From the IMG/VR virus record IMGVR_UViG_3300009508_000011, positions 1-64,000 of that record: a stretch of 64,000 nt of DNA; one strand, written 5' to 3'. Within the stretch, counting starts at the first letter, position 1. Every line of letters begins with the position of its first letter. Shown piece after piece: positions 6,621 through 63,958 of this stretch. Position numbers and translations under genes: made by a program. The notes under the pieces were generated by a model. It was not told the DNA's origin, did not search any database, and was given only the letters and a program-made list of their open reading frames with translations.

Positions 6621-6657
6621 AAGGCCCCCTTCACTTAAAACTAATTGTCGTATCACC

Positions 6658-6683
6658 AGTATAATATATTTCTGAAATAATTT
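6658..6683 (-). promoter_or_regulatory. phiKZ-type early-like promoter (TATATTAT)
   Basis: Minus strand AAATTATTTCAGAAATATATTATACT; resembles the phiKZ early consensus TATATTAC. Confidence 0.55.
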
Positions 6684-19839: not shown

Positions 19840-19912
19840 TACTTTCTCTTTTATTTAAAGTTAACTATTCAATAAGATTATATATGTCTGTAAAAAAGTT
19901 GATACGTCATAA

Positions 19913-32924: not shown

Positions 32925-32970
32925 TCACTAATGTAATATGTATCTATCGTTTTCTGGGAACGACAAAAAA
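32925..32970 (-). promoter_or_regulatory. 46-bp early promoter/stem-loop cassette, copy 1
   Basis: TCACTAATGTAATATGTATCTATCGTTTTCTGGGAACGACAAAAAA; minus strand holds CATATTAC. Confidence 0.8.
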
Positions 32971-37222: not shown

Positions 37223-37268
37223 TCACTAATGTAATATGTATCTATCGTTTTCTGGGAACGACAAAAAA
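37223..37268 (-). promoter_or_regulatory. 46-bp early promoter/stem-loop cassette, copy 2
   Basis: Identical to 32925-32970. Confidence 0.8.
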
Positions 37269-37784: not shown

Positions 37785-37877
37785 ATTACTTTCCTTTTAC
37801 ACAGTACTAAGTTTAATGCTTTATTGCACTAGTATAATATGTGTTTGTTATTGTTTATAATTAAAGGTGTAGGTATA

Positions 37878-41215: not shown

Positions 41216-42040
41216 ATGTATTTAGGCGAATTACTTAGAAATAATTACGACATCGAACGTGTCGCTATTACTATCAAAGCCCTTGAGCTTTTCATGTCGA
41301 TGGACTATTTACAAGCCGAGGCTGACTTAGAGAAACTTATTAGTGACTGGGGTAACCTTACAGACACATCTAGTCTCCTTAGTGAAATAGATAACAGAAT
41401 CATCGAACACCTAGTATTCATTGTTCACGAATACGGCATAACACTCAATAGCGACTACAATCCATCCTTGTACGAAATGTACACTTTGGTTAACGGTATA
41501 GAGTTATTAACTCAGTACGACCAACCAGAAGACCTGTTGGATGTTATCGAAGCACAGGAAGATAATGTAGAACGTATGGTAGAGGCCATAGGGTTAGTTG
41601 TTAAGGATATGTTAACTGGTAATATCCTAGACTACTATAACATAGTGGAAAGCACTACCGAAGATTTCTGGAAGAATTTGATTTTGGTGGTTGAAGGTAC
41701 TAAAGAAGAGATTGTGGACTTCGATGCTAAGGTAAATATTAAACCTCCTCTTACTCCTAGTAAAGTGTGGGAGTGGATTGAACTTAGTGGACGTGCTGGT
41801 TACAGACTAGATGCTGCATTTAAGTTACATGACCAGATGTTAGAAGAAACTCTGGAACAGACTCCTAAGCGCGTTGCTATACAACAAATTTGTTTGGAGC
41901 TTAAGACCTTAGTACATTACTCAGGCAATGAAGATAAATCTGACGATGTTGTTTATCAACTATTAGAAGAACTTGACCCCAATCCAGACACATTACTAAT
42001 GGCTCAGTCGTTCCTACCGTACATTGACTTGGGACTTTAA
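41216..42040 (+). CDS. Conserved acidic hypothetical protein (gp79-like)
   Basis: 274 aa directly before the vRNAP subunit; AAGGAG RBS. Confidence 0.7.
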   Translation: MYLGELLRNNYDIERVAITIKALELFMSMDYLQAEADLEKLISDWGNLTDTSSLLSEIDNRIIEHLVFIVHEYGITLNSDYNPSLYEMYTLVNGIELLTQYDQPEDLLDVIEAQEDNVERMVEAIGLVVKDMLTGNILDYYNIVESTTEDFWKNLILVVEGTKEEIVDFDAKVNIKPPLTPSKVWEWIELSGRAGYRLDAAFKLHDQMLEETLEQTPKRVAIQQICLELKTLVHYSGNEDKSDDVVYQLLEELDPNPDTLLMAQSFLPYIDLGL

Positions 42041-42058
42041 CAGACCAAAGGTTTAAAC

Positions 42059-43315
42059 ATGAATAAAAAAGCTTTTTTATTATTCCTTGCCCGTAATAAG
42101 TTATACGCAAAAAAGAAAGTATTAATTTCTTCTTTCGCTATAATTCAACCGGAAGAGCAAGGTACATCTGAACCTTACGTGGGTCAGGTAACAACACGTG
42201 ATGGTAAAGTGACCATCATGGATGACCAATTAGAACCTCAAATACTTGAAGGTTGGGTTGATGGTAAACCATATCTAGACGTAAACGAAATCGTAGAGTT
42301 AGACTCAGGCGATATCCCAAACGTTAAAGATAAAGTTAAAACTACATACGGCATTGCTTTAGTTAACCTACTAATGCTTACACATGCTTTTGGTGACAAA
42401 ATTCCATACATGAATGGTGTTATCGGGTACGGTAGACTTGAGTCTAAGGTATTAGAAGCACTACATGGTGGAGACATCAGTGTAGAGGAGCTTAGGGTCT
42501 TTCTTAAAGCCGCTTCTTGGTCTACTGGCATAATGCCATTGTTTATAGCACCGACCTCTCCTAAGTCCATACAGGGCGCTCCAGAGGCCAAGGCACTACG
42601 TAAGAAATTAATCGAAGAACGCAAAGATAGATTGGATGACCCAACTGCTCTTGCTGAAATCGATACCGCACTTTCAAAACTAGATAAAGAATACATCGAG
42701 GGTGATGTTACTGAGGCTTTCTATAAGTCAGGTAAGGCACACAACGTAACTCGTAAACGTATGTACTCTATATTCGGTGGTGAAGCAGATATGGAGAATC
42801 CATCTAAGATGAATCTTGTATCTAACTCATTGGAAGAAGAGTGGGACGTAGAACAAATGCCAGCAATGATTAATGCCTTGCGTATGGGTTCTTATAAGCG
42901 TGGTGCAGAAACTGCATTAGGTGGTGCTGACTTTAAAGATTTATCTCGTATGTTCCAAAACATCAAGATAACCGAAGATGACTGCGGTACTAAGGTTGGT
43001 AAGAGAACTTTATTTACTAATGAAAACTACAAACGTCTAACTGGTCGTACTACGGTTAAAGGTAAGAAATTATCTGATACAGATGCTAAAGCTTTAATTG
43101 GTAAACGGGAACTGTTACGTTCACCACAAGCCTGTAAGACTAAGGGTTCTAACTTCTGTAAGGTTTGTGTTGGTGAAGCAGTATCAATCAATCCTAACTC
43201 CGTAGGTATGCTTGCAGCTAATCTAGGTGCTTCTTTCTTAAGTATCATGATGGCAGCCATGCATGGCCGTGCGTTGACACTGGTAGAAGCAGACTTAAAT
43301 GAGGTACTATCGTAA
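42059..43315 (+). CDS. Virion RNA polymerase beta'-middle subunit (gp80-like)
   Basis: RMGSYKRGAETALGG, ITEDDCGT, LRSPQAC...FCKVCVG Zn site, MAAMHG. Confidence 0.88.
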   Translation: MNKKAFLLFLARNKLYAKKKVLISSFAIIQPEEQGTSEPYVGQVTTRDGKVTIMDDQLEPQILEGWVDGKPYLDVNEIVELDSGDIPNVKDKVKTTYGIALVNLLMLTHAFGDKIPYMNGVIGYGRLESKVLEALHGGDISVEELRVFLKAASWSTGIMPLFIAPTSPKSIQGAPEAKALRKKLIEERKDRLDDPTALAEIDTALSKLDKEYIEGDVTEAFYKSGKAHNVTRKRMYSIFGGEADMENPSKMNLVSNSLEEEWDVEQMPAMINALRMGSYKRGAETALGGADFKDLSRMFQNIKITEDDCGTKVGKRTLFTNENYKRLTGRTTVKGKKLSDTDAKALIGKRELLRSPQACKTKGSNFCKVCVGEAVSINPNSVGMLAANLGASFLSIMMAAMHGRALTLVEADLNEVLS

Positions 43316-43488
43316 TGAATTACTTTAACAGAGTACATAGACACATCAGTGACGTAGCTAATGTTACATTACCATATCGGGACATCGATGCGCATAATAA
43401 CTCACGCATTAAGGCCTCTAAGCTTTTTAAGCCTCGTGGTAAAACCTTCGATAAAATGTGTAAGTTAAGTAAAACAACCAAATGGTAA
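43315..43488 (+). CDS. Small basic protein missed by the ORF track (57 aa)
   Basis: TAATG overlap, GAGG RBS, ends just before terminator 43507. Confidence 0.65.
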   Translation: MNYFNRVHRHISDVANVTLPYRDIDAHNNSRIKASKLFKPRGKTFDKMCKLSKTTKW

Positions 43489-43506
43489 TAAGTAAGTACA
43501 TAATCA

Positions 43507-43536
43507 GGAGAGCTTCGGCTCTCCCTTATGCCGTAT
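43507..43536 (+). terminator. Terminator plus TTATGCCGT; identical to 35051-35080
   Basis: GGAGAGCTTCGGCTCTCCCTTATGCCGTAT. Confidence 0.9.
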
Positions 43537-43596
43537 TTGTATGATAGTCGCCAGCTATCAATCGTGGTTAACTACATTAACTGAAAGGATTAAACC

Positions 43597-43989
43597 ATGG
43601 ACATTGAAAGTGCATTAAGGTTGGCGTATCGTGCTGGTAAGGAAGATGCATTATTACCTGATGGGGAAAACGAAGCAGTGGTGAGTATATTAAAAAATAT
43701 AAACCTTCGTAGATTCTCAATAGGTGATTGGATATTCGATATTAAACAAGTAAGAGCTTTAAAGGCACCTGTACATGGTGTACCATACAGTGCCACTGCC
43801 ATGATGACCTTGAATGGTGCAAGTGCTTACATAGATACTTTTCTAACTAAGGATTACGGTAGTTTAAGTAGAAAAGATTTTACGTCGATGACCACCGCAT
43901 CAAAATTGTTAGGTACTGAACGTTTGACATATGACCGCATTAAACCAAACCTTAAAAGAAGTGAAAGTTTAGACTTAACATCTACCTAA
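43597..43989 (+). CDS. Hypothetical protein
   Basis: 130 aa; AAGGA RBS; terminator at 44006-44023. Confidence 0.75.
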   Translation: MDIESALRLAYRAGKEDALLPDGENEAVVSILKNINLRRFSIGDWIFDIKQVRALKAPVHGVPYSATAMMTLNGASAYIDTFLTKDYGSLSRKDFTSMTTASKLLGTERLTYDRIKPNLKRSESLDLTST

Positions 43990-44027
43990 GGTGAAAAAAA
44001 AATAAGGAGGGCTAGTGCCCTCCGTAT

Positions 44028-44762
44028 TTATGCAGTCCATTCATAACCAGTGGACATTAACCCATCCCACACATCTTTAGTGTATACTTTAAAGGGTCCA
44101 ATTAATTCTGTACTGTTGGACAGTATGTGCTCAATTAAATCCTCCTCTTTAATCGTATACCAACCATCTAGATAATCAACAACCTCAGAGGTGTCATTGA
44201 AAATATATGGCACATTAGAAATAGTGTGAACAAGTACTGGTTCGATATCCAGACGCCTCCATACGTTGGTTCTATCAACCATATACATATTGCGTCTAAG
44301 TTTCTTATCGAACACGCAAATCATACTTGGTTTAGGCGAGTCATCCTTACGCAAAACTCCGTGAGTATAGAATTTTAATCTACCGTGAATAAATCTAATC
44401 TGTCCCCTAAGTAAATAATTTAAGAAGACTTTGGTCGAGGTATCCACAGGAATGAATAGTACTACTGTAGCACCTTTCCTAGATTCATCCCAAGCCTTCT
44501 TAATGAACTTACCCTTATTAGCGGTATCGTTAGGTGGTGCACAGAAGACTACTTCATTGCTCCAATCTTTCACTAGTGCATCATCTTCAATGGTGTAGTA
44601 TTTATCACACTTAGCATTATCGGCACTAGCTGCTGCATCTAGAGTAAAGTTAAACTCTCTATCCAGCTGATTGAAAATGTCCTCTATGGTCCCGTTGCTG
44701 TCAGGGGTACTGGGTCCAAGATAGGTCTTGTCCACAAAGTTATTCTTAATTCTATCTGCCAT
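44028..44762 (-). CDS. Phage N6-adenine DNA methyltransferase family protein with degenerate catalytic motif
   Basis: FTLDAAAS...NAKC..YYT.EDDAL..DW and IRFIHGRLKF family motifs; motif IV reads FCAPPN instead of NPPY/F. Confidence 0.8.
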   Translation of the reverse strand: MADRIKNNFVDKTYLGPSTPDSNGTIEDIFNQLDREFNFTLDAAASADNAKCDKYYTIEDDALVKDWSNEVVFCAPPNDTANKGKFIKKAWDESRKGATVVLFIPVDTSTKVFLNYLLRGQIRFIHGRLKFYTHGVLRKDDSPKPSMICVFDKKLRRNMYMVDRTNVWRRLDIEPVLVHTISNVPYIFNDTSEVVDYLDGWYTIKEEDLIEHILSNSTELIGPFKVYTKDVWDGLMSTGYEWTA

Positions 44763-44850
44763 CGTAATTCCTCATTTTATTTAAACTTTCCTTTTATGTG
44801 TTTACGAAAAAAATAAAGGGGCACTAAGCCCCTTTTTATTCTCAGCTATT

Positions 44851-45936
44851 TTATTGCTGGTCAAGTAGACCGACCTTAGTAACTAAACTTAACAGACAAG
44901 TTTGTGCTTCATCTGATTCCATTCGGTTAATAATATCGAAAACGAATTGAGAGGCAAAATCGGATAGCCTTACACACTCTGCTGTGGTTATGGTGTATTG
45001 TCCAGGATTAGAGAATAAAAGTATTGAGCGTTCTTTCTGTACATCAGTAAGACGCTGTATCAATAATTCTTTCCTTTGTTCCAATGGCATACGACCAAGT
45101 GTGTATGAAATAGCTTTACCAACTATCACGCCCTCATGAGTTAGAGATGGATAGGTCTGTACTACAGGTTCCTTATCCACTATATCTTCCTCATCGAACA
45201 GGATTTCTTTACGTATCTTAACCTTGGCGTAAACCTCAGTCATGGTATTCATACTTGTATACCCACGTAAGATGTCTTGTTGCTTTTCTGACATATCTTT
45301 CAATTGACGATTGGTCAACTTACAATTCAGATGTAACAACTCCTTAATTGAATCGGAATCAAATGTCAGGTCTTCGCTATAAGTAGCTAAGTTAGCATTC
45401 GCCCAATTTCTTAAGGATGACTCCAGTTCGTCTTCATATACAACACCATCATCGCTCACTCCTGCAAGTAACATTATTGCAGCGACGTCTCTTGCATCAC
45501 GTTCACGTAGTTTTAATACGTTAAGCTCAGAAGAGTTGAACTCTACCCTTAAACCGTTAGATAAGGCGTCTAGGATTTCGTCAGGTGTTTTACACGGGTC
45601 TGATTTCAGATTCAGAACGTTTAATAAAGACCCTAGCTGCTTGCGTTCGATTATTTCGTCTACAAGTCTAGTAAGAGTTATCCTATCAAGGTGCCTAATT
45701 TCAGATACCAATCCACGGACTACAAATACTGCTATTGTCGTATCATCACTTCCGATTAGTTCCCTAACCGTTGAAAGATAATTACAGGTCTTTTGGACCC
45801 AACGTTCAGTCACCTGTGGTTCCATCATAAACCGTGACCATATTGTTATTAGAACTGCTGCCAGTTCGTTTTCTTTGATGGATGAGTGTTCAACAATTGG
45901 AACTTTTCTAATAAGTCCTGTATCAACTGTGTACAT
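44851..45936 (-). CDS. Hypothetical protein
   Basis: 361 aa; AGGAG RBS; terminator at 44815-44835. Confidence 0.8.
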   Translation of the reverse strand: MYTVDTGLIRKVPIVEHSSIKENELAAVLITIWSRFMMEPQVTERWVQKTCNYLSTVRELIGSDDTTIAVFVVRGLVSEIRHLDRITLTRLVDEIIERKQLGSLLNVLNLKSDPCKTPDEILDALSNGLRVEFNSSELNVLKLRERDARDVAAIMLLAGVSDDGVVYEDELESSLRNWANANLATYSEDLTFDSDSIKELLHLNCKLTNRQLKDMSEKQQDILRGYTSMNTMTEVYAKVKIRKEILFDEEDIVDKEPVVQTYPSLTHEGVIVGKAISYTLGRMPLEQRKELLIQRLTDVQKERSILLFSNPGQYTITTAECVRLSDFASQFVFDIINRMESDEAQTCLLSLVTKVGLLDQQ

Positions 45937-46005
45937 TGTTTTTAACTCCTAATATAGGTGATATCACAATGAGTTGTTAGTTGCACTGCTACTCCATGGT
46001 ACTAC

Positions 46006-46767
46006 TTAGTTTATATCAAACTCACCACGCACTTTCATGCTGGAGTTCAGGTTGATGTTAATGCTAGCAACCCTTTTTCTAAAGTACAGAGGCATGTTAA
46101 TGAAAGCCAGTAGGTCTAGTATTGCTAAAGACATACTTGACGGTAACTTACCTGTATCCTTAATAACGACTAACAACTCCCCTTTTTCTTTCAACGCATA
46201 ATCGTCCTCCAATGTTTCTATAAACTTACTACACATAGCCGCACGACAAACTAATGTCTCTTGGTTCTGTATAGATATAACACCACACATCTTGGCATAG
46301 TGGAACAGCCAATCAGTTTGACCTTCAAAACAAGCCTTGTTACCAGCTTTGAGTTGTGTCAAATAGTACTCCATAGATTTCAGGATAATATCTGCCATGA
46401 AATCATTGCAACCTTGTAACTCTCGGATTTCTACCAATAGTTCATGTCGGTACACCTCTACCAAAGCCGCGTACACTCTAAATGAGCTAGGCATGGTGAA
46501 GTACTCTGACAAATACAAGTTTGACGGTATATCGGATATATCAACGTAATTAATTGTTTCAATATCCGGACTAGTTTGAGCGACAACTTCTTTTTGCTTT
46601 GGTTGTACCACCTCAGTTGGTGGTCTATGTACTTGGTTGTCTTTTGCTTCAGATTTTTCGGTAATAGCGCCGTCCCTAAGGTTGGCGCATTTAGCAGCTA
46701 CGTTTAATGCTACATTACCAAGAAATTCTAAAGTCCAGTTGGTTATGGGCTTTAGTCTTTCCTTCAC
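46006..46767 (-). CDS. Hypothetical protein
   Basis: 253 aa; GTGA overlap with helicase stop. Confidence 0.7.
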   Translation of the reverse strand: MKERLKPITNWTLEFLGNVALNVAAKCANLRDGAITEKSEAKDNQVHRPPTEVVQPKQKEVVAQTSPDIETINYVDISDIPSNLYLSEYFTMPSSFRVYAALVEVYRHELLVEIRELQGCNDFMADIILKSMEYYLTQLKAGNKACFEGQTDWLFHYAKMCGVISIQNQETLVCRAAMCSKFIETLEDDYALKEKGELLVVIKDTGKLPSSMSLAILDLLAFINMPLYFRKRVASININLNSSMKVRGEFDIN

Positions 46768-48293
46768 TTTAGCGGTCTCCCTATAATGAATGAAGATTCC
46801 ATTTCACCTATCGATTTAACACGTGGACGGAGAAGCTTTTTCTTCTTCTCATGGTACTCCATATGCTTCGGTAGATTCCTCGCTAGGATATACATGAAAT
46901 CTGGTTCAACATCAGGCCAATCCTTTAACTTCCTCAACCTGCCCACAATCTGGATATTAGCCTGACTGGAACTGATATTGGTCGTCATTAGACTGTAGCG
47001 TAACCCTGGTATATCAACACCAGTACCTGCCGATAAAGCAGTAGACACAGAAATGTCTGATTCCATAAGGACTTCATAGTCATCCTCAGAAATGTACCGT
47101 GCAACATCTAGGGTAGGGTTTCGTATAGCCAAGTGGTCAGCTATCTTACCACACATCTCCTTAGTAGCCGCAAAGACTAAAGCTTTCTGCCCGTCCTCTC
47201 TACGACCAACGTACATGTCATATACCAGAGCATCAATCATCGCTAGGTATTGTGCTAGATAAAGAGGCTTCTTAAGAATGCTTTCTTCAAATAGCGTATG
47301 ACTATACATCTTCTGTTGGTTGATGTGTCTAATCTTCTCAGGTTCCCACAACTCGTACGTAAGTGCTCGCACACGAATGTATCTATCGAAATCACCAGGC
47401 ATGAAACGCATTCGCTCAGGCCATTGTATCTGTAACATTTTGTTACGGAATGGTGAGTCGGTAGTTATAGTAGCCGATAGGAAGATGGTCTTAGGTATAT
47501 GTGCATACAAGTCCATCTTGAAGATTTGATGTTGGTTTTCATGGGCTTCGTCAACAACTCTTAATCCAACCCCTAGAACTTTCCACAGCTCCCAAGGTTT
47601 TATCGGATAACCTCTCAGCTTACCCATCTCGTAATCTTTATAGAAACGAGCAAGTGTTGTAGTTGAAGCAATGATAGCCTTGTAATTGAATTCTCCAGCC
47701 AGTGATAAATTGATTGCACTTAACAAAGCTTTACTGCCACGTATAACGCAAATCTCTTTCTTACTTAACTGTAGACATTCTTCAAGGTCACCAATCCATT
47801 TCTCGATATACTTACCACCCATTTGGAAACAGGTAAGTACCCCAAGAGTTTCAGCAGCTTTTTGACTACAGAAAGTTTTACCTTGTCCTGTAGCAAGTGT
47901 AACTACTTTAGATTCACCGGGGTCTTCCATATACTGGATTACCCGTGGTTGGTCATCTCTTGGTTGCCAATGGTCAGGAATACTGTAATTCACTTCATTA
48001 GGAGTGTACATTCGCTTATGCGTTATGTCAATCAGATGAATTGGAATGCCAGCGTTCTTTACCATATCGATGAATTCATCGTACTGGTTAATGTGGAAAC
48101 GATAATAGCTTCTGTCAGCACACGAGGCTGCATAGACTTTCTTAGCTTCCTTGTGAAACTTACCTCTCGCGTAGAATCCCGCCCACTCAATGAGAGGACG
48201 GAGAAAATTACCGATGAGAGGTCGCATACGAGGTGATATCTTAGTCACCGAGAAATGGTGACTATAAACAGATATGTTACAATATTGACTCAA
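46764..48293 (-). CDS. Superfamily 2 DEAH helicase (gp75-like)
   Basis: LATGQGKT, VVDEAH, LSAT, QIVGRLR. Confidence 0.92.
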   Translation of the reverse strand: MSQYCNISVYSHHFSVTKISPRMRPLIGNFLRPLIEWAGFYARGKFHKEAKKVYAASCADRSYYRFHINQYDEFIDMVKNAGIPIHLIDITHKRMYTPNEVNYSIPDHWQPRDDQPRVIQYMEDPGESKVVTLATGQGKTFCSQKAAETLGVLTCFQMGGKYIEKWIGDLEECLQLSKKEICVIRGSKALLSAINLSLAGEFNYKAIIASTTTLARFYKDYEMGKLRGYPIKPWELWKVLGVGLRVVDEAHENQHQIFKMDLYAHIPKTIFLSATITTDSPFRNKMLQIQWPERMRFMPGDFDRYIRVRALTYELWEPEKIRHINQQKMYSHTLFEESILKKPLYLAQYLAMIDALVYDMYVGRREDGQKALVFAATKEMCGKIADHLAIRNPTLDVARYISEDDYEVLMESDISVSTALSAGTGVDIPGLRYSLMTTNISSSQANIQIVGRLRKLKDWPDVEPDFMYILARNLPKHMEYHEKKKKLLRPRVKSIGEMESSFIIGRPLK

Positions 48294-48318
48294 AATTAAC
48301 CTCTCCCGTTGTTGCCAG

Positions 48319-50295
48319 TTACCCCGCTAGAATATTGTCGAAGTTGTGGTCAGGATTATTCTTGTTGATATAAGACGAAGCACGCATTATAACATCACCA
48401 TGTCTTTCAAATGCCATAGCCGCAGACATACTACGGTTAAACATATTCTCACGATGAATGTTAAACGATTCTTCCTCTTGACCAATAGGTGGACAATTTG
48501 AATTGGCCCGCACAGTTGATGTTACCATAGACGACAATAACAATATCTCAAGATGCAATACATTTACATTAGCTCTGCTATTTACAATATCGTAAAGTTT
48601 ACGCAGCGCCTCAGCAGAAGTCTTACATGCAAAGACACCATTACGACCTTTCTTCTCAATGAAGTTAGATATGCTTTTCATGTACTCAAGCATGTTCATG
48701 TGTCGTTGTGGCATTACCAAGAATGGTTTACTAAACGTCCAATGTGCTAAATCAATCACATAGTCGCCATAGTTATCAACTTCCCAACCGTACTTCTTCA
48801 AGTACTCTAGAAATTCATAAGTAAAGCTAGCTAGACGTGGTCCTACTGAAGTAGGTACAATATTATCCACGTTCTCATCTACACCTTTACTGTTTTTGAT
48901 TGTTCGTCTAATAACGATTTCAGCCATAGCAGCAAGTGTTGTAGTAGGGAGAATTTTAACATCAACAACTTCAGGGTTATTAATGTCTTCCAGATATTTA
49001 ACGTACTGTTCTGGAATAACTAACTTTGGACTTTGGTCTTTCAGGGTCATGTGGAATTGAATCTTAGACTGGTCAGTAGTGTTCAACTTAATGAACTCCG
49101 CATCACGAGCTTCTATATTCAAATGTTCAGCAACCGATGAACCATCTTCATGTTTGGTAGACATTACCTTTTGGGTTACGAATGAACATAACGCAATAGC
49201 ACTAATGTGTCCCAATCTAGTAGCCTGCTTATAATACATCTGACTTGGTATTGAATAACTCAAAGACCCACAGCATGTTTCACAGACCATATACTCATGA
49301 CGATGTTTACATTCCAAAGCAGAACGTAAGCGAATTAACTTACCTTCCAAATGTTTAGATTGCTTAGTAATTTCTTCCAGTTTACCATCTGCTGTAACAT
49401 GTACCTTACCAGCAAGATTACCAAGTGATTTCTTTGTAACTAAGAATTCAACTGTACCGGAAGTTCCACAGTCACCGGGAACTAAACCTTTTACGTATTG
49501 GTTTTGTAAAGATACTTTACGACCAAAGTACTCAGTAGCACGTAGAGGTTCAGTTGTAACTTTAAGTGCCTTAGTACCAGAGCGTGACTCCATAGCAGAA
49601 TCAGCAATCTTCTTAAGACCCTCAGCGTATCCCGGCATAACTGGTCTACGGAATATATTGGAATCGTAATCTGTTATAAAACCACGAGGACCAATAGCCT
49701 GTAATACCTGACCAACCGATATTAAAGATGCACGACACGCTACACAGACAGCATTGTCATTAAGTGTAGGACAGTTCATTATAATGTCAGTAATCTGGCG
49801 ATAGGTTTGCTCAAGACTAGCAGTACTAGGACGCGCTTCAGCCTTAGCTTCCTTTATTACAGGATGTTCTAACAGTTCAAGATAATCGAGAACTGAGATT
49901 GTTGTTACGTATGCTTCTAGTTCTTCACCAGTAAACACAAATACATTGTTAAAGATAATCATTGCCATACGGTTTAATAAATCCATATCGCGACAGATAC
50001 CTTGGTCGAAACATTCCCACAGAGGCCGTGAGATTAATTTCTTATGGACACTATTACCGAAAACAACATTACCGATATGGTGATGTGGCAATAGAGGTAA
50101 CTGAGGGAATTGACGATGGTAATCCCAATAGATAGTTGACACTATAGTCTTACGACCATTGAGTGTTTCTATTGTACCATCATCGAACTCCACCTGCATC
50201 GTTAACACGTCACAGTAACGTTCCATAAGTTCTTCCATCGAGAGAGGTAACAAGTCTCTCGCTTTAACTACGCCATCAAGGTGTATTGGATGCAT
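48319..50295 (-). CDS. Non-virion RNA polymerase beta' C-terminal subunit (gp74-like)
   Basis: IGPRGF, ESRSGTKAL, DCGT, LRSALEC...CETCCG, TQKVMSTKH trigger-loop equivalent. Confidence 0.9.
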   Translation of the reverse strand: MHPIHLDGVVKARDLLPLSMEELMERYCDVLTMQVEFDDGTIETLNGRKTIVSTIYWDYHRQFPQLPLLPHHHIGNVVFGNSVHKKLISRPLWECFDQGICRDMDLLNRMAMIIFNNVFVFTGEELEAYVTTISVLDYLELLEHPVIKEAKAEARPSTASLEQTYRQITDIIMNCPTLNDNAVCVACRASLISVGQVLQAIGPRGFITDYDSNIFRRPVMPGYAEGLKKIADSAMESRSGTKALKVTTEPLRATEYFGRKVSLQNQYVKGLVPGDCGTSGTVEFLVTKKSLGNLAGKVHVTADGKLEEITKQSKHLEGKLIRLRSALECKHRHEYMVCETCCGSLSYSIPSQMYYKQATRLGHISAIALCSFVTQKVMSTKHEDGSSVAEHLNIEARDAEFIKLNTTDQSKIQFHMTLKDQSPKLVIPEQYVKYLEDINNPEVVDVKILPTTTLAAMAEIVIRRTIKNSKGVDENVDNIVPTSVGPRLASFTYEFLEYLKKYGWEVDNYGDYVIDLAHWTFSKPFLVMPQRHMNMLEYMKSISNFIEKKGRNGVFACKTSAEALRKLYDIVNSRANVNVLHLEILLLSSMVTSTVRANSNCPPIGQEEESFNIHRENMFNRSMSAAMAFERHGDVIMRASSYINKNNPDHNFDNILAG

Positions 50296-50324
50296 AATTG
50301 AATATTTCCTTTTAAGTTAATTCG

Positions 50325-52493
50325 TTATTTACCAGGTTTATACGGAGCGTATCTAAATTCAACGCCACCGCACATCATCAAATGTTTCATGAGTTGCAAT
50401 GGACGTGAGTTACCACGAGGTATTTTCTTACGGTTAACAACACAATCAATATCGGTAGGTTTCTCAGCCGTCATTATATTGTGGTTAATTTCTTCTGATG
50501 AATACAACGAGTTAGTTCTATCCAACAATTCCGCTACTATATCTGGGTCCATAACCGCAGACATTAGACGTACCTCTGATTCACCTGCAAAACGCACAGG
50601 AGATTCACGATAAGGGTTAAGATATTTATCCGCTCTACCCAACTGTACAACAATGCCGTGATGTTGACGCTTAGCAATTGAAGTAGTTGACCAATCTTCA
50701 CCAGTTTTATCTAGCAACATCATGTACTTAGTATCAATGGCTACAGGACGCTTAGTAGTAATCATCTTACCTGAGTTACCACGATAGGTAACAGGACCGA
50801 CAATACTTTTACAATTAGCTTCTATATCCTTGACTTGCTGAATACCGATGTTAGGACTATTTGGTGGCAGCATTAAAGTAATGGCTTCTTGGTCAGTTAG
50901 TTTAGGATTACCCACTTCACGAACATGATTATCTTGTTTATCTTTACTATCAAGATGTTTCATGCAATACCAATACATATACGGCGACGCTGCTTTATAA
51001 TACGCCATTAGAATCTGATAACCTTCTTCCAATGATGCACAAGCACGAACACGTCTAGCACATTGTGTACTGGCTTGGTTAGTCCACTGCTCAAATATCT
51101 GACCAACATTAGAACGCTTAATTACTGAAAGCGGGTCTTTAATAACATCTGCTACAATACCACAAGCAGTAGTAGGCATATCAGCATCTGGACGAATACC
51201 AACTATTACACCTTTTGTACCGTGAGTATCCGTAATCTTGTAACCGATTGTTGGAACCTTACGATAGGCATAAGTTATTTCAATGTTGAAGTCATCTAGA
51301 GGGGCTTTGTTCTTGGTGCGAACAACTCTATCCTTACTTGAGTCATTAAAGTTAGCATACGCTTCAACTACCCAAGAATGGAAAGCAGGAGTTATATCCA
51401 AGTTACCACGACGTTTACTATTGTTCTGCTGATAAAGCTCTATTATTTTTCTATAGAACAAATCCTTACTTTGCACATACTTCAACATCTCGTCATCCAT
51501 TCCAGTAGGAGTGGTTCGATATCTAGCATTGTGGTCAGTTAGTATTTCAACATCTACAATAGTTGCACCAGGCTGAGCATAAATCGTTTTGTCAAATTCG
51601 ATGTCTACTCTATCACCCAACAGATTACGAGGATGTAAATCTGAGATGGTTAAGTTTTCATCTATCGTACGGAAAGCCATAACTAAACCGTCTTCACGAA
51701 TTTTCTCACCGGGACCAGGGAAAGGTTTATAGTGATTCTCATCACCGTACAGATTAAGTGGGAATATATGCTTACCACAAGAAGCTGTACGAGTACCTAA
51801 CATAGTCGTTGCCAACTTACGTTGATAACTCTCACTAATTTCAAAACCATCCTCAATGATACCTGGGACAGTCATGTAAGCTACGTTAGTTTCAATACCG
51901 TACTCGTAGTTACCTTCATTATCTACACAAGGAGAATCTGCAAGTACTGTACCTTTACCAACATTGCCACCTTTAGTGATGCGTTGTAAAGCATGTGTGT
52001 TCTGTTTGTATTTCCAACCCAGACTTGTGTGCTGGAAGAAGTATTTCTCAAGTAGGATACTTCCGATTTCTTTTGTTTCAAAATCTTCATATACTACCAA
52101 GGTAGAAGGGTTTTCTTTAATAGCTCCCTGAGATACCTGCTTAGCATATTTAGGGAACACACCAAGGATTGTTGCATTGACAGGAATGCGTTGATTAAAA
52201 GTGTACTTACCAAATTCACGTTCCGTACCAGTAAGGTTACGACGTACTGTAGAGCCTTCAGTTACCAAACGTTGTTTAAGGTGAGATGCTTGCATCTGCT
52301 GACGAGATGCTGAGTTAACGGCTACCCAAGGATTCAAATTTGTTGGAGCACCAACAAGTTCAATATCTAATTCGTTGACTAAACTGGCCTTCCCCTCATC
52401 GTCAAGGGTCACGAACAGTTCTGTCTGTAAATCCATATACAATGGTTCACCGTCCATATCCGTGATATGAAGAAATCGTTTATCATCAATCAT
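50325..52493 (-). CDS. Non-virion RNA polymerase beta C-terminal subunit (gp71-73-like), uninterrupted
   Basis: GYKITDTHGTKG, PLSVIKRSNVGQIFE, VRFAGESEVR. Confidence 0.92.
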   Translation of the reverse strand: MIDDKRFLHITDMDGEPLYMDLQTELFVTLDDEGKASLVNELDIELVGAPTNLNPWVAVNSASRQQMQASHLKQRLVTEGSTVRRNLTGTEREFGKYTFNQRIPVNATILGVFPKYAKQVSQGAIKENPSTLVVYEDFETKEIGSILLEKYFFQHTSLGWKYKQNTHALQRITKGGNVGKGTVLADSPCVDNEGNYEYGIETNVAYMTVPGIIEDGFEISESYQRKLATTMLGTRTASCGKHIFPLNLYGDENHYKPFPGPGEKIREDGLVMAFRTIDENLTISDLHPRNLLGDRVDIEFDKTIYAQPGATIVDVEILTDHNARYRTTPTGMDDEMLKYVQSKDLFYRKIIELYQQNNSKRRGNLDITPAFHSWVVEAYANFNDSSKDRVVRTKNKAPLDDFNIEITYAYRKVPTIGYKITDTHGTKGVIVGIRPDADMPTTACGIVADVIKDPLSVIKRSNVGQIFEQWTNQASTQCARRVRACASLEEGYQILMAYYKAASPYMYWYCMKHLDSKDKQDNHVREVGNPKLTDQEAITLMLPPNSPNIGIQQVKDIEANCKSIVGPVTYRGNSGKMITTKRPVAIDTKYMMLLDKTGEDWSTTSIAKRQHHGIVVQLGRADKYLNPYRESPVRFAGESEVRLMSAVMDPDIVAELLDRTNSLYSSEEINHNIMTAEKPTDIDCVVNRKKIPRGNSRPLQLMKHLMMCGGVEFRYAPYKPGK

Positions 52494-52615
52494 TCTTATA
52501 GTTTCCTTTTATTTTATTAAGAGTGTATGCCATTAGATAATATATGTTTATAATTATTTAATCGGGTAGGTATCTCTTTTTATGTTTAGTTCTTAGAAGC
52601 TTCGGAGACCAGCTA

Positions 52616-53416: not shown

Positions 53417-53462
53417 TCACTATTGTAATATGTATCTATTGTTTTCTGGGAACGACAAAAAA
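53417..53462 (-). promoter_or_regulatory. 46-bp early promoter/stem-loop cassette, copy 3
   Basis: 44 of 46 bases identical to copies 1 and 2. Confidence 0.8.
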
Positions 53463-56334: not shown

Positions 56335-56420
56335 TTTAACTTTCCTTTTATTTAGCAATAAGATGCTTGAAGTTGTTGATTACACTACGATAATATATAC
56401 TTAAATATCGTACGGATAGA

Positions 56421-57989: not shown

Positions 57990-58020
57990 CACTAAGATAA
58001 TATATGTTTAAAATTATTTA
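57990..58020 (-). promoter_or_regulatory. Early-like promoter (TATATTATC)
   Basis: Minus strand AAATAATTTTAAACATATATTATC; near-identical copy at about 52536-52560 and a related one at about 56388-56408. Confidence 0.6.
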
Positions 58021-63520: not shown

Positions 63521-63958
63521 CTATTTGGTTTTACTTTCTTTCTCTACTTCATCAAAGAACATATCCAATTCTTCCAGACGACGTTCAACGTCATCGTTCA
63601 GATGTGACATAAATTCTTTATTGAAGTGTTGCAGTGGTACAAAGATAATACTACGATGTACCTTTACGATATCATCACCCCACTCACCTTCTAAGTCGTC
63701 AGGTAAGTCACCAGGATAATATATGCCTATACGAGCTTTCATTCGTTCTTTTACGAACTCCATAGTCTCTTTATCTAGGCGGTAGTCACCCTGCTCAATT
63801 GAACATTCTGGATTATACAGCTCTATGTTCTCATTGTAACATAAAGAGTATACCTTAAGTTCATCCTCACTCATTGAACGTGGTGGGCGATGTAGAAAGA
63901 ATGGATTGTTAGGTAGTTGGTCACGTACAGATATAAAATTAGCACCTGCCATTTCCAA
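63521..63958 (-). CDS. Hypothetical protein
   Basis: 145-aa ORF; start may differ. Confidence 0.65.
   Translation of the reverse strand: MEMAGANFISVRDQLPNNPFFLHRPPRSMSEDELKVYSLCYNENIELYNPECSIEQGDYRLDKETMEFVKERMKARIGIYYPGDLPDDLEGEWGDDIVKVHRSIIFVPLQHFNKEFMSHLNDDVERRLEELDMFFDEVEKESKTK

What the first reader, a model, noticed from the sequence alone, without database searches (positions are those of the whole stretch)
44028..44762. Dam-family methyltransferase with a broken catalytic motif in a GATC-depleted genome
Family motifs are intact, but motif IV reads FCAPPND (codons checked) where NPPY/F is required. An extra ~80-aa C-terminal domain is also present. Some members of this phage family, such as T1 Dam, methylate GATC, which this phage seems to lack. 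The intact ORF suggests repurposing as a catalytically dead DNA reader targeting host GATC, a SAM sink or a decoy for restriction-modification systems.
Basis: partly seen in the sequence, partly recalled or inferred. Interest (0 to 1): 0.65.

Follow-up and report, generated by a model that had tools for sequence, protein, structure and literature searches.

The report
Conserved dead Dam-like protein, GATC-free phage
A marine jumbo phage with no GATC site in its genome keeps, under purifying selection, a relative of GATC-methylating phage Dam enzymes whose catalytic NPPY motif reads APPN and which has gained an extra C-terminal domain, so it is most likely a repurposed non-methylating protein rather than a decaying gene.

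Summary
Window 44028-44762 (-) encodes a 244-aa PF05869 Dam-family protein whose motif IV reads C-A-P-P-N where 67 of 67 aligned canonical relatives have N-P-P-Y. It carries an extra ~75-80-aa C-terminal domain. The 206,117-bp genome has 0 GATC (about 700 expected).

This is not decay. Six relatives (30-96% identical) all have A/S-PP-N/S plus the C-terminal domain. They form one clade inside the canonical family. The motif is encoded by different synonymous codons, and dN/dS is 0.08-0.28. Other near-invariant positions are also replaced (W23, H114; in subgroups P26, R107, D109, F144), while the presumed AdoMet-side motifs are kept.

Every relative sits in a related phiKZ-like phage contig with 0 GATC; this genome also encodes a chimallin homologue. 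The closest characterised relative, M.Phi93DAM (45% identity), methylates GATC and protects against DpnII.

The C-terminal domain resembles homing-endonuclease DNA-binding modules by fold only, and it is acidic.

Best reading: a conserved pseudo-methyltransferase derived from a GATC Dam. Its present role is unknown; a host-GATC reader, an R-M decoy or altered chemistry are all untested.

The parts
44028..44762 (-). Gene for the 244-aa Dam-like protein (stop codon included)
   Evidence: ORF list and sequence; PF05869 at E 2.9e-26; the only match to this protein in the whole genome
44277..44693 (-). Methyltransferase-like core, residues 24-162 (small gamma-type N6-adenine methyltransferase fold without a target-recognition domain)
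   Evidence: Extent of the Pfam match. AF2 model has mean pLDDT 84. Best Foldseek PDB matches are PCIF1/CAPAM, M.TaqI and EcoDam, E 3e-4 to 6e-3. 45% identical to the GATC enzyme M.Phi93DAM
44529..44543 (-). Motif IV, residues 74-78, C-A-P-P-N in place of the canonical C-N-P-P-Y
   Evidence: Codons TGT GCA CCA CCT AAC. 67/67 canonical relatives have N..Y. Relatives have APPN, APPS or SPPS, encoded by differing synonymous codons
44031..44270 (-). C-terminal domain, residues about 165-244, specific to the clade; beta-beta-beta-alpha-alpha-beta-alpha, acidic
   Evidence: Absent from canonical relatives. AF2 pLDDT about 80-90. Fold matches: I-HmuI Z 5.7, sCTP Z 5.5, I-TevI DNA-binding domain Z 4.6; ESM Atlas GIY-YIG/HNH+NUMOD clusters at TM 0.58-0.70; BFVD HNH/GIY-YIG/NUMOD proteins at E 0.016-0.25. 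No Pfam or PHROG family. Net charge -11, pI 4.1
44006..44023 (.). GC-rich hairpin (GGAGGGC-TAGT-GCCCTCC) flanked by A/T runs, between this gene and the convergent 130-aa gene; probably a bidirectional terminator
   Evidence: Read directly from the sequence; not tested further
44818..44832 (-). Hairpin (GGGGC-loop-GCCCC) followed by a T run on the minus strand; terminator-like end of the upstream 361-aa gene, making the Dam-like gene its own unit
   Evidence: Sequence; conserved in the orthologous upstream regions of P0001, P0003 and P0005
44785..44803 (-). Degenerate copy (4 mismatches) of the phage promoter-like motif RACAYATATWATNNTANTG, 41 nt upstream of the ATG
   Evidence: The motif has 10 matches in the window, all on the minus strand, against 0.68 expected. 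The orthologue upstreams of P0003 (0 mismatches) and P0005 (1 mismatch) carry it

Best explanation
The gene encodes a conserved pseudo-methyltransferase. Shown: it descends from the small phage Dam enzymes (PF05869). Its closest characterised member methylates GATC and protects phage DNA from DpnII-type restriction. Shown: in one lineage of marine phiKZ-like jumbo phages (this genome also encodes a chimallin homologue), motif IV changed from NPPY to A/S-PP-N/S and other near-invariant positions (W23, H114) were replaced. Positions P26, R107, D109 and F144 then drifted in sublineages. Residues that by analogy form the AdoMet-binding side stayed invariant: T25, F-x-L-D42-A-A-A, T57 and D66-W67. 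A new ~75-residue acidic C-terminal domain was added, and the whole protein stayed under purifying selection. Shown: all of these phage contigs lack GATC entirely, so the protein cannot be protecting its own DNA at GATC. Inferred: it can no longer make N6-methyladenine (about 85% likely). Inferred: it now works by binding rather than by catalysis, with the basic methyltransferase-like core holding AdoMet and/or nucleic acid. Inferred: the acidic C-terminal module contacts a partner or regulates the core. Its target (host or foreign GATC-bearing DNA, a host R-M or Dam component, or something else) is not known.
For: Family membership is shown, and the fold. Motif IV reads APPN against 67/67 NPPY. 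Of 268 collected family sequences, 239 have NPPY and 9 NPPF; non-canonical motifs occur only in this clade plus three singletons.

Six relatives at 30-96% identity share the non-canonical motif and the C-terminal domain. They form one clade (SH-aLRT 89) nested in the canonical family. Selection is purifying: dN/dS is 0.28 (closest pair), 0.14-0.16 and 0.08, and the motif is encoded by different synonymous codons in different members.

The pattern of change fits a pseudoenzyme. Former near-invariant positions 114 and 144 now vary within the clade, while the motif I/II/III-like residues are invariant.

In Hia5, Hin1523 and Nme1821, changing DPPY to APPY alone abolished adenine methylation (PMC3299994). 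M.Phi93DAM is 45% identical with E 2e-35 and is a validated G6mATC enzyme (PMC4190342).

There are 0 GATC sites in G000 (206 kb), in G001 (218 kb) and in every kin locus. No other DNA methyltransferase family was detected in the genome.
Against: There are no biochemical data of any kind. Conservation of the AdoMet-side motifs could equally mean that the protein is still an enzyme with another acceptor. The C-terminal domain's likeness to DNA-binding modules is by fold only and weak (Z 4.6-5.7, E >= 0.016). Its acidity argues against DNA binding by that domain. Metatranscriptome contigs cover the neighbouring gene but not this one, so expression is unproven. One relative (P0130) lacks the N-terminal AdoMet-side half. 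It comes from a 4x long-read contig, so this may be an assembly artefact or real.
Confidence: 0.6

Rival explanations
1. It is still an enzyme. The AdoMet-binding half is intact, and the remodelled pocket (A/S at position 1, N/S at position 4, N for W23) accepts a different substrate or does different AdoMet chemistry. Possible acceptors are another base atom, a modified base, RNA, protein or a small molecule.
For: AdoMet-side residues are invariant across relatives down to 45% identity. Positions 23, 75 and 78 are fixed to new residues within the APPN group rather than drifting. Purifying selection is strong.
Against: To my knowledge no amino-methyltransferase works without D/N/S at position 1 and an aromatic at position 4. 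D-to-A alone kills Hia5-type enzymes. In the wider clade the motif itself varies (APPN, APPS, SPPS), and former pocket positions 114 and 144 are variable. That looks like relaxation rather than a newly tuned active site. No base-modification pathway partner was found (no TGT).
Confidence: 0.2
2. It is a catalytically dead GATC reader. It keeps the ancestral GATC recognition and binds GATC on host, plasmid or competing-phage DNA. In an infected cell that is all non-self DNA, because the phage has none. It would mark, block or recruit something to that DNA.
For: The closest characterised relative is GATC-specific. Every genome or contig carrying the variant has 0 GATC, while control contigs with canonical relatives have GATC at 0.3-2.2 times expectation and phiKZ at 1.4 times. 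The methyltransferase-like core is basic, pI 7.6-9.5.
Against: Specificity in PF05869 is not known to be uniformly GATC, and how these TRD-less enzymes recognise it is unknown. The co-occurrence amounts to one phylogenetic event, since all carriers are related phages. No nuclease of the DpnII, MutH/Sau3AI or DpnI families is encoded. Total GATC loss is sufficiently explained by restriction avoidance, as in Staphylococcus Kayvirus phages (PMC7596081).
Confidence: 0.12
3. It is an anti-defence decoy or a cofactor trap. It would mimic a methyltransferase subunit to poison host R-M/BREX-type complexes, use the acidic C-terminal domain as a DNA mimic, or sequester AdoMet.
For: The C-terminal domain is acidic (net -4 to -11). 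The gene is a stand-alone unit lying in variable regions of related phages. The AdoMet-side motifs are kept.
Against: There is no similarity to known anti-restriction proteins. Stoichiometric sequestration of AdoMet is implausible at cellular AdoMet levels (general knowledge). Nothing here tests an interaction.
Confidence: 0.06
4. It is a decaying relic of a Dam gene that became useless once the genome lost its GATC sites.
For: The catalytic motif is lost and no GATC substrate remains in the genome. One relative appears N-terminally truncated.
Against: The reading frame is intact in all full-length relatives, down to 45-50% identity, with synonymous sites saturated. dN/dS is 0.08-0.28. The derived motif is conserved through synonymous change. 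A folded domain was gained and conserved.
Confidence: 0.02

Closest known systems
M.Phi93DAM of Lactococcus phage Phi93 (PF05869; also T1 Dam-type small phage methyltransferases)
   Same: Same family and fold: 45% identity over 131 residues, E 2e-35. The N-terminal T-P region, the F-x-L-D motif, D-W, P-P, K-A-x-x-E and G-R-L-K-F are shared. Both are stand-alone phage genes. M.Phi93DAM makes G6mATC and protects against DpnII (PMC4190342).
   Different: M.Phi93DAM is 140 aa with NPPY, P-A-R-T-D-T, H and A-P-F-P-S. The window protein has APPN, P-V-D-T-S-T, L and S-P-K-P-S plus about 80 extra C-terminal residues. Its genome has no GATC to methylate.
Catalytically dead methyltransferase paralogues such as METTL14 (EPPL in place of DPPW), from general knowledge
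   Same: The methyltransferase fold is retained under selection although motif IV is degenerate, which implies a binding or scaffolding role.
   Different: METTL14 works with an active partner (METTL3). No second DNA methyltransferase family was found in this phage. The AdoMet-side motifs appear conserved here, and the families are unrelated.
C-terminal DNA-binding modules of free-standing homing endonucleases (I-HmuI, I-TevI; NUMOD-containing HNH and GIY-YIG proteins, including phiKZ gp56 and relatives)
   Same: The best fold matches of residues about 165-240 in three independent libraries. Like those proteins, the module sits C-terminal to an enzymatic head, in a stand-alone phage gene.
   Different: There is no sequence-level family match and the scores are weak. 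The domain is acidic whereas DNA-binding modules are normally basic. The head is methyltransferase-like, not a nuclease.
Complete restriction-site avoidance, e.g. Staphylococcus Kayvirus phages lacking all GATC (Sau3AI) sites
   Same: A large phage genome with zero GATC (PMC7596081). Here the avoidance is achieved by synonymous codon choice: Asp is always GAC before a C, 447 of 447 times.
   Different: Here it occurs in a marine phage lineage whose genome encodes a chimallin homologue. It is shared by relatives whose synonymous sites are saturated, and it coexists with a retained but motif-dead Dam homologue. The host and the selecting nuclease are unknown.

Membership tests
PF05869 phage Dam (DNA N6-adenine methyltransferase) | Sequence match above the curated Pfam threshold | tested here: met
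   92.6 bits against a cut-off of 28.1, E 2.9e-26; nested inside the family tree
PF05869 phage Dam (DNA N6-adenine methyltransferase) | Catalytic motif IV (N/D/S)-P-P-(Y/F/W) | tested here: not met
   APPN here; 67/67 aligned canonical relatives have NPPY; 250 of 268 collected sequences are canonical by the regex tally
PF05869 phage Dam (DNA N6-adenine methyltransferase) | AdoMet-side motifs (T-P region, F-x-L-D-small-small-A, D-W) | tested here: met
   T25, F39, T40, L41, D42, A45, T57, D66 and W67 are conserved with the canonical family. Their role in AdoMet binding is inferred by analogy and was not measured
PF05869 phage Dam (DNA N6-adenine methyltransferase) | Other near-invariant family residues (W23, P26, R107, D109, H114, F144) | tested here: not met
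   All are replaced (N, I, D, S, L, K); positions 114 and 144 vary within the clade
PF05869 phage Dam (DNA N6-adenine methyltransferase) | Methyl transfer to adenine N6 in DNA (GATC for characterised members) | not testable with these tools
   Needs an enzyme assay or a methylome. The genome offers no GATC substrate
Pseudoenzyme (selected, non-catalytic derivative of an enzyme family) | Catalytic residues lost while the fold is kept | tested here: met
Pseudoenzyme (selected, non-catalytic derivative of an enzyme family) | Purifying selection and conservation of the derived state across divergent relatives | tested here: met
   dN/dS 0.08-0.28; the motif is kept through synonymous changes; 7 sequences form one clade
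Pseudoenzyme (selected, non-catalytic derivative of an enzyme family) | Demonstrated absence of catalysis | not testable with these tools
   Inferred only, from motif logic and D-to-A mutants of other adenine methyltransferases
Homing-endonuclease-type (I-HmuI/I-TevI/NUMOD) DNA-binding module, for the C-terminal domain | Fold similarity | tested here: inconclusive
   The top hits are consistent but weak: Z 5.7, 5.5 and 4.6; TM 0.58-0.70; E 0.016-0.25
Homing-endonuclease-type (I-HmuI/I-TevI/NUMOD) DNA-binding module, for the C-terminal domain | Sequence match to NUMOD/HTH families, or to any homing endonuclease | tested here: not met
   No Pfam or PHROG match. There is no other copy in the 2,747 ORFs taken from two whole kin genomes, four kin loci and one phiKZ locus. 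The word search found only the close orthologue
Homing-endonuclease-type (I-HmuI/I-TevI/NUMOD) DNA-binding module, for the C-terminal domain | Basic, DNA-compatible surface charge | tested here: not met
   Net charge -4 to -11 and pI 4.1-5.2 in all seven members
Restriction-site avoidance (GATC) | Observed count far below expected, achieved through synonymous choices, and shared by relatives | tested here: met
   0 against about 700 in G000 and in G001. No GAT before C, no ATC after G, no TCN after xGA. 0 in all kin loci. Controls are not depleted to zero
Restriction-site avoidance (GATC) | A GATC-cutting enzyme in the host (or phage) that imposes the selection | not testable with these tools
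   The host is unknown. No DpnII, MutH/Sau3AI or DpnI family member is found in the phage

The most novel reading that the evidence does not exclude
The phage lineage uses 'no GATC' as its definition of self. The dead Dam homologue would keep the ancestral GATC recognition and act as the targeting or marking subunit that directs an unidentified activity against every GATC-bearing DNA in the infected cell: host chromosome, plasmids and co-infecting phages. Its own genome would stay invisible to that activity.
Probability: 0.1. Interest if true: 0.85.

Novelty: new variant of a known kind. Interest (0 to 1): 0.58.

Why it matters
Phage orphan methyltransferases are normally read as anti-restriction enzymes. 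Here a member of such a family has lost its catalytic motif, has gained a new domain and is still maintained by selection. It sits in a widespread marine jumbo-phage lineage that has removed the family's known target site (GATC) from 200+ kb of DNA. That gives a concrete, cheap test case for pseudoenzyme evolution in phages: one small soluble protein with a clear ancestral activity and clear predictions. It also bears on how chimallin-encoding phages deal with restriction before or outside the nuclear shell. In addition, it warns annotators that 'DNA N-6-adenine methyltransferase' labels transferred by Pfam match alone are wrong for this clade.

Tried and rejected
- **Close DNA relative among 50,697 phage records:** none found.
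- **Klebsiella phage GZ7/RCIP hits covering 82% of the query:** these looked like relatives with the C-terminal domain. The gene is a canonical CNPPYS Dam, and the alignment merely ran through its stop codon. Rejected.
- **P0138 (289 aa):** it matched across the full length in the profile search, but it has NPPF and an unrelated tail. It lies in a temperate element with TGT, PAPS-reductase and D12 methylase genes where GATC is twice the expected count. Not a clade member.
- **M.EcoGII and Hia5 as family references:** both belong to other classes (beta and alpha). They were used only for the D-to-A mutant precedent.
- **PDB sequence searches, single protein and profile:** no usable hit.
- **C-terminal domain by sequence:** nothing in Pfam, PHROGs, a local HMM search of kin genomes, or the region-restricted word search.
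- **GATC nucleases and other methyltransferases in the phage:** PF04556, PF02976, PF06044, PF01555, PF02086 and PF00145 were all absent. The PF05063 search is uninformative because its control did not ring. TGT is absent.
- **Expression:** metatranscriptome contigs cover 45079-45555 in the neighbouring gene but not this gene. This is no evidence either way.
- **Neighbouring genes (361, 253, 130 and 57 aa):** no family assignment.
- **Complex prediction:** not used, because no specific interaction is claimed.

Full report
**What is at the coordinates**

Window 44028-44762 (minus strand) is an intact 244-codon ORF with an ATG start and a GAGG ribosome-binding site. It lies between two hairpin-plus-T-run elements, so it looks like its own transcription unit. 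The protein matches Pfam PF05869 (Dam, phage N6-adenine methyltransferase) at E 2.9e-26 over residues 24-162, and phrog_111 at E 5.8e-43.

Residues 74-78 are encoded by TGT GCA CCA CCT AAC, which reads C-A-P-P-N. In a 73-sequence alignment, all 67 canonical relatives have N at position 75 and Y at position 78. Canonical relatives end by about residue 150-170, whereas this protein continues to 244.

The window has no GATC, against 189 +/- 14 in shuffles. The whole 206,117-bp virus record (direct terminal repeats, GC 40%) has none either, against about 680-740 expected.

**The motif is a conserved derived state, not damage**

The word-index search and a full profile search of 1.84 billion representatives found 8,730 family members. 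Only a handful share the C-terminal domain:

| Protein | Identity to query | Motif IV | Note |
|---|---|---|---|
| P0001 | 96% | APPN | |
| P0002 | 65% | APPN | |
| P0003 | 62% | APPN | |
| P0004 | 66% | APPN | fragment |
| P0005 | 50% | APPN | |
| P0121 | 45% | SPPS | |
| P0130 | 30% | APPS | N-terminal part missing |

Across 268 collected family sequences the tally is NPPY 239 and NPPF 9. Non-canonical motifs occur only in this clade and in three unrelated singletons.

In a maximum-likelihood tree of the methyltransferase core, the seven variant rows form one clade (SH-aLRT 89). The clade is nested inside the canonical family. Its sister is a marine canonical group that includes a Pseudoalteromonas prophage protein. 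The motif columns were not removed from that tree.

The A-P-P-N residues are encoded by different synonymous codons in different members (GCA/GCT, CCA/CCT/CCG, CCT/CCC/CCA, AAC/AAT). Pairwise dN/dS is 0.28 for the closest pair, 0.14-0.16 for the 62-65% pairs and 0.08 between P0002 and P0003. dS is near saturation in the distant pairs.

**More than motif IV has changed**

Among positions that are at least 85% invariant in canonical relatives, the clade has replaced these:

- W23 to N
- P26 to I or L (kept as P in P0005 and P0121)
- N75 to A or S
- Y78 to N or S
- L103 to F
- R107 to D (A in P0121, R in P0130)
- D109 to S
- H114 to L, I, S, A, K or R
- F144 to K, Y, H or I

These residues are kept: T25, L33, E36, F37, F39, T40, L41, D42, A45, C52, T57, L63, D66, W67, P76, P77, K89, E93, T108, R123, R128, F131 and S146.

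The AF2 model (mean pLDDT 84) is a small Rossmann-type core. Its best solved-structure matches are N6-adenine methyltransferases: PCIF1/CAPAM, M.TaqI and EcoDam, at E 3e-4 to 6e-3.

The next step is inference from my memory of M.TaqI-type gamma-class enzymes, not a residue-level superposition. By that analogy the conserved set corresponds to motifs X, I, II and III, the AdoMet side. The replaced set corresponds to the flipped-adenine pocket and catalytic loop.

Changes universal in the clade (positions 23, 75, 78, 114) were followed by drift at other formerly invariant positions in sublineages. That is the pattern expected after loss of catalysis with the fold retained.

Experimental precedent comes from a different class. 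In Hia5, Hin1523 and Nme1821, changing DPPY to APPY alone abolished adenine methylation (PMC3299994).

**The link to GATC**

The closest experimentally characterised relative is Phi93_04, M.Phi93DAM of Lactococcus phage Phi93. It is 140 aa and 45% identical over 131 residues, E 2e-35, and has CNPPY. SMRT sequencing and DpnI/DpnII digests showed that it makes G6mATC and protects against DpnII (PMC4190342). An ancestral GATC specificity is therefore plausible, though not proven for this branch.

**The genomes that carry the variant**

The phage is a distant phiKZ-like jumbo phage:

- The RNA polymerase beta subunit is about 35% identical to those of Erwinia, Klebsiella, Pseudomonas and Xanthomonas jumbo phages.
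- Neighbouring genes are RNAP beta/beta-prime pieces and a helicase, arranged like phiKZ gp71-gp80.
- The genome encodes a homologue of the phiKZ nuclear shell protein gp54, E 3e-35, outside the window.

Near-identical sequence occurs in marine, aquaculture, sponge and sand metagenomes from 14 studies. P0001, P0002, P0003 and P0121 sit in syntenic positions in related contigs. P0130 sits in a related phage but at another locus, inside a variable island.

Every one of these contigs has 0 GATC:

| Sequence | GATC found | Expected |
|---|---|---|
| Whole 218-kb relative G001 | 0 | about 730-790 |
| L003 | 0 | 74 |
| L005 | 0 | 62 |
| L006 | 0 | 17 |
| L032 | 0 | 74 |
| L034 | 0 | 77 |

Codon context shows how this is achieved:

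- Asp before a C-initial codon is GAC 447 times and GAT never, against 70% GAT elsewhere.
- ATC never follows a codon ending in G.
- TCN never follows a codon ending in GA.

Control contigs with canonical family members have GATC at 0.3-2.2 times expectation, and phiKZ has 1.4 times. Complete GATC loss in a large phage has a precedent in the Staphylococcus Kayvirus phages, attributed to Sau3AI (PMC7596081).

All carriers are related, so the co-occurrence of 'variant motif' and 'no GATC' counts as one evolutionary event, not as replicated evidence. The phage encodes no recognisable DpnII, MutH/Sau3AI or DpnI family nuclease. It also has no other DNA methyltransferase family and no TGT. The MT-A70 search is uninformative.

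**The C-terminal domain**

Residues about 165-244 fold confidently both alone and in the full model. Three independent structure libraries give the same kind of top hit:

- Solved structures: I-HmuI C-terminal region Z 5.7, a DNA-binding sCTP Z 5.5, the I-TevI DNA-binding domain Z 4.6.
- ESM Atlas clusters of GIY-YIG and HNH endonucleases with NUMOD domains, including a 'PHIKZ179 family', at TM 0.58-0.70.
- BFVD HNH, GIY-YIG, NUMOD4 and 'I-HmuI-like NUMOD-like' proteins, including those of PA7, Psa21, phiKZ gp56 and Goslar, at E 0.016-0.25.

The scores are individually weak, and there is no sequence-level match to anything outside the clade. The domain is also acidic in all seven members, with net charge -4 to -11 and pI 4.1-5.2. 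The methyltransferase-like part is basic, with pI 7.6-9.5.

I therefore treat 'homing-endonuclease-type DNA-binding fold' as a lead about the domain's origin. It is not evidence that the domain binds DNA. It may instead contact a protein or the core itself.

**Interpretation**

- **Best supported (confidence 0.6):** a selected pseudo-methyltransferase derived from a GATC-type phage Dam. It can no longer make m6A and cannot be protecting its own GATC-free DNA, so it acts by binding.
- **Still an enzyme with altered chemistry or acceptor (0.2):** favoured by the conserved AdoMet side, disfavoured by the variable motif and pocket.
- **Dead GATC reader aimed at non-self DNA (0.12):** attractive but untested.
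- **R-M decoy, DNA mimic or AdoMet trap (0.06).**
- **Decaying relic (0.02):** contradicted by the selection data.

**Limits**

- No biochemical, methylome or expression evidence exists. Metatranscriptome contigs cover only the neighbouring gene.
- The host is unknown.

Noticed in passing
whole genome G000 (window = G000:C1:1-64000) and kin genome G001: Besides GATC, several 6-bp palindromes are absent or nearly so, and they differ between the two relatives. CTCGAG is 0 in G000 and 1 in G001; GCATGC is 0 and 1; GAGCTC is 2 and 16; CTGCAG is 11 and 0. This looks like lineage-specific restriction-site avoidance layered on the universal GATC loss.
   Followed up: partly
window 6654-6672, 19870-19888, 32926-32944, 37224-37242, 37827-37845, 52530-52548, 53418-53436, 56383-56401, 57990-58008, 63709-63727 (all minus strand): A promoter-like motif, RACAYATATWATNNTANTG, occurs 10 times against 0.68 expected. 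All copies are on the minus strand. The copies checked (e.g. 19870-19888, 37827-37845, 52530-52548, 57990-58008) lie 44-62 nt upstream of ORF starts, including the RNAP beta gene. It is probably a phage RNA polymerase promoter class.
   Followed up: partly
G000:C1:71182-72954 (-), outside the window (locus L039): A 635-aa ORF is homologous to the phiKZ nuclear shell protein gp54 (chimallin): E 3.2e-35, 27% identity over residues 21-616. The phage is therefore probably nucleus-forming.
   Followed up: partly
window 41216-52493: The gene order is a split RNAP beta-prime-like piece (42059-43315), a helicase (46764-48293), a beta-prime-like piece (48319-50295) and RNAP beta (50325-52493). This mirrors phiKZ gp80, gp75, gp74 and gp71-73. 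The Dam-like gene lies in the zone that holds small accessory genes gp76-78 in phiKZ.
   Followed up: partly
window 45079-45555 (inside the 361-aa ORF 44851-45936, minus strand): Contigs from three marine metatranscriptome runs (two studies) cover this part of the neighbouring unknown gene at 99% or higher identity. None covers the Dam-like gene. DNA carry-over in these libraries cannot be excluded.
   Followed up: no
L034:10001-10576 (related phage, 126-kb contig): A divergent copy (APPS, 31% identical) sits at a different genomic position, next to dCMP deaminase, thymidylate synthase and DHFR genes. It lacks the N-terminal ~60 residues, and an in-frame stop lies upstream. The contig is a 4x long-read assembly, so the truncation may be an error.
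   Followed up: partly
L035:6343-13284: A canonical NPPF family member (P0138) lies in an integrase-bearing element. Its neighbours are a radical-SAM gene, a TGT/DpdA-like gene, a PAPS-reductase-like gene and a D12-class methylase, and GATC is twice the expected count there. This is a DNA-modification island unrelated to the finding.
   Followed up: no
L032:10001-11960 versus window 44028-45936: In the P0121 phage, the Dam-like gene and the ~350-aa gene that seems to correspond to the window's 361-aa neighbour (homology inferred from size and position only) sit in the opposite order to the window, but remain adjacent. Either the unit moved locally or the two genes are linked.
   Followed up: no
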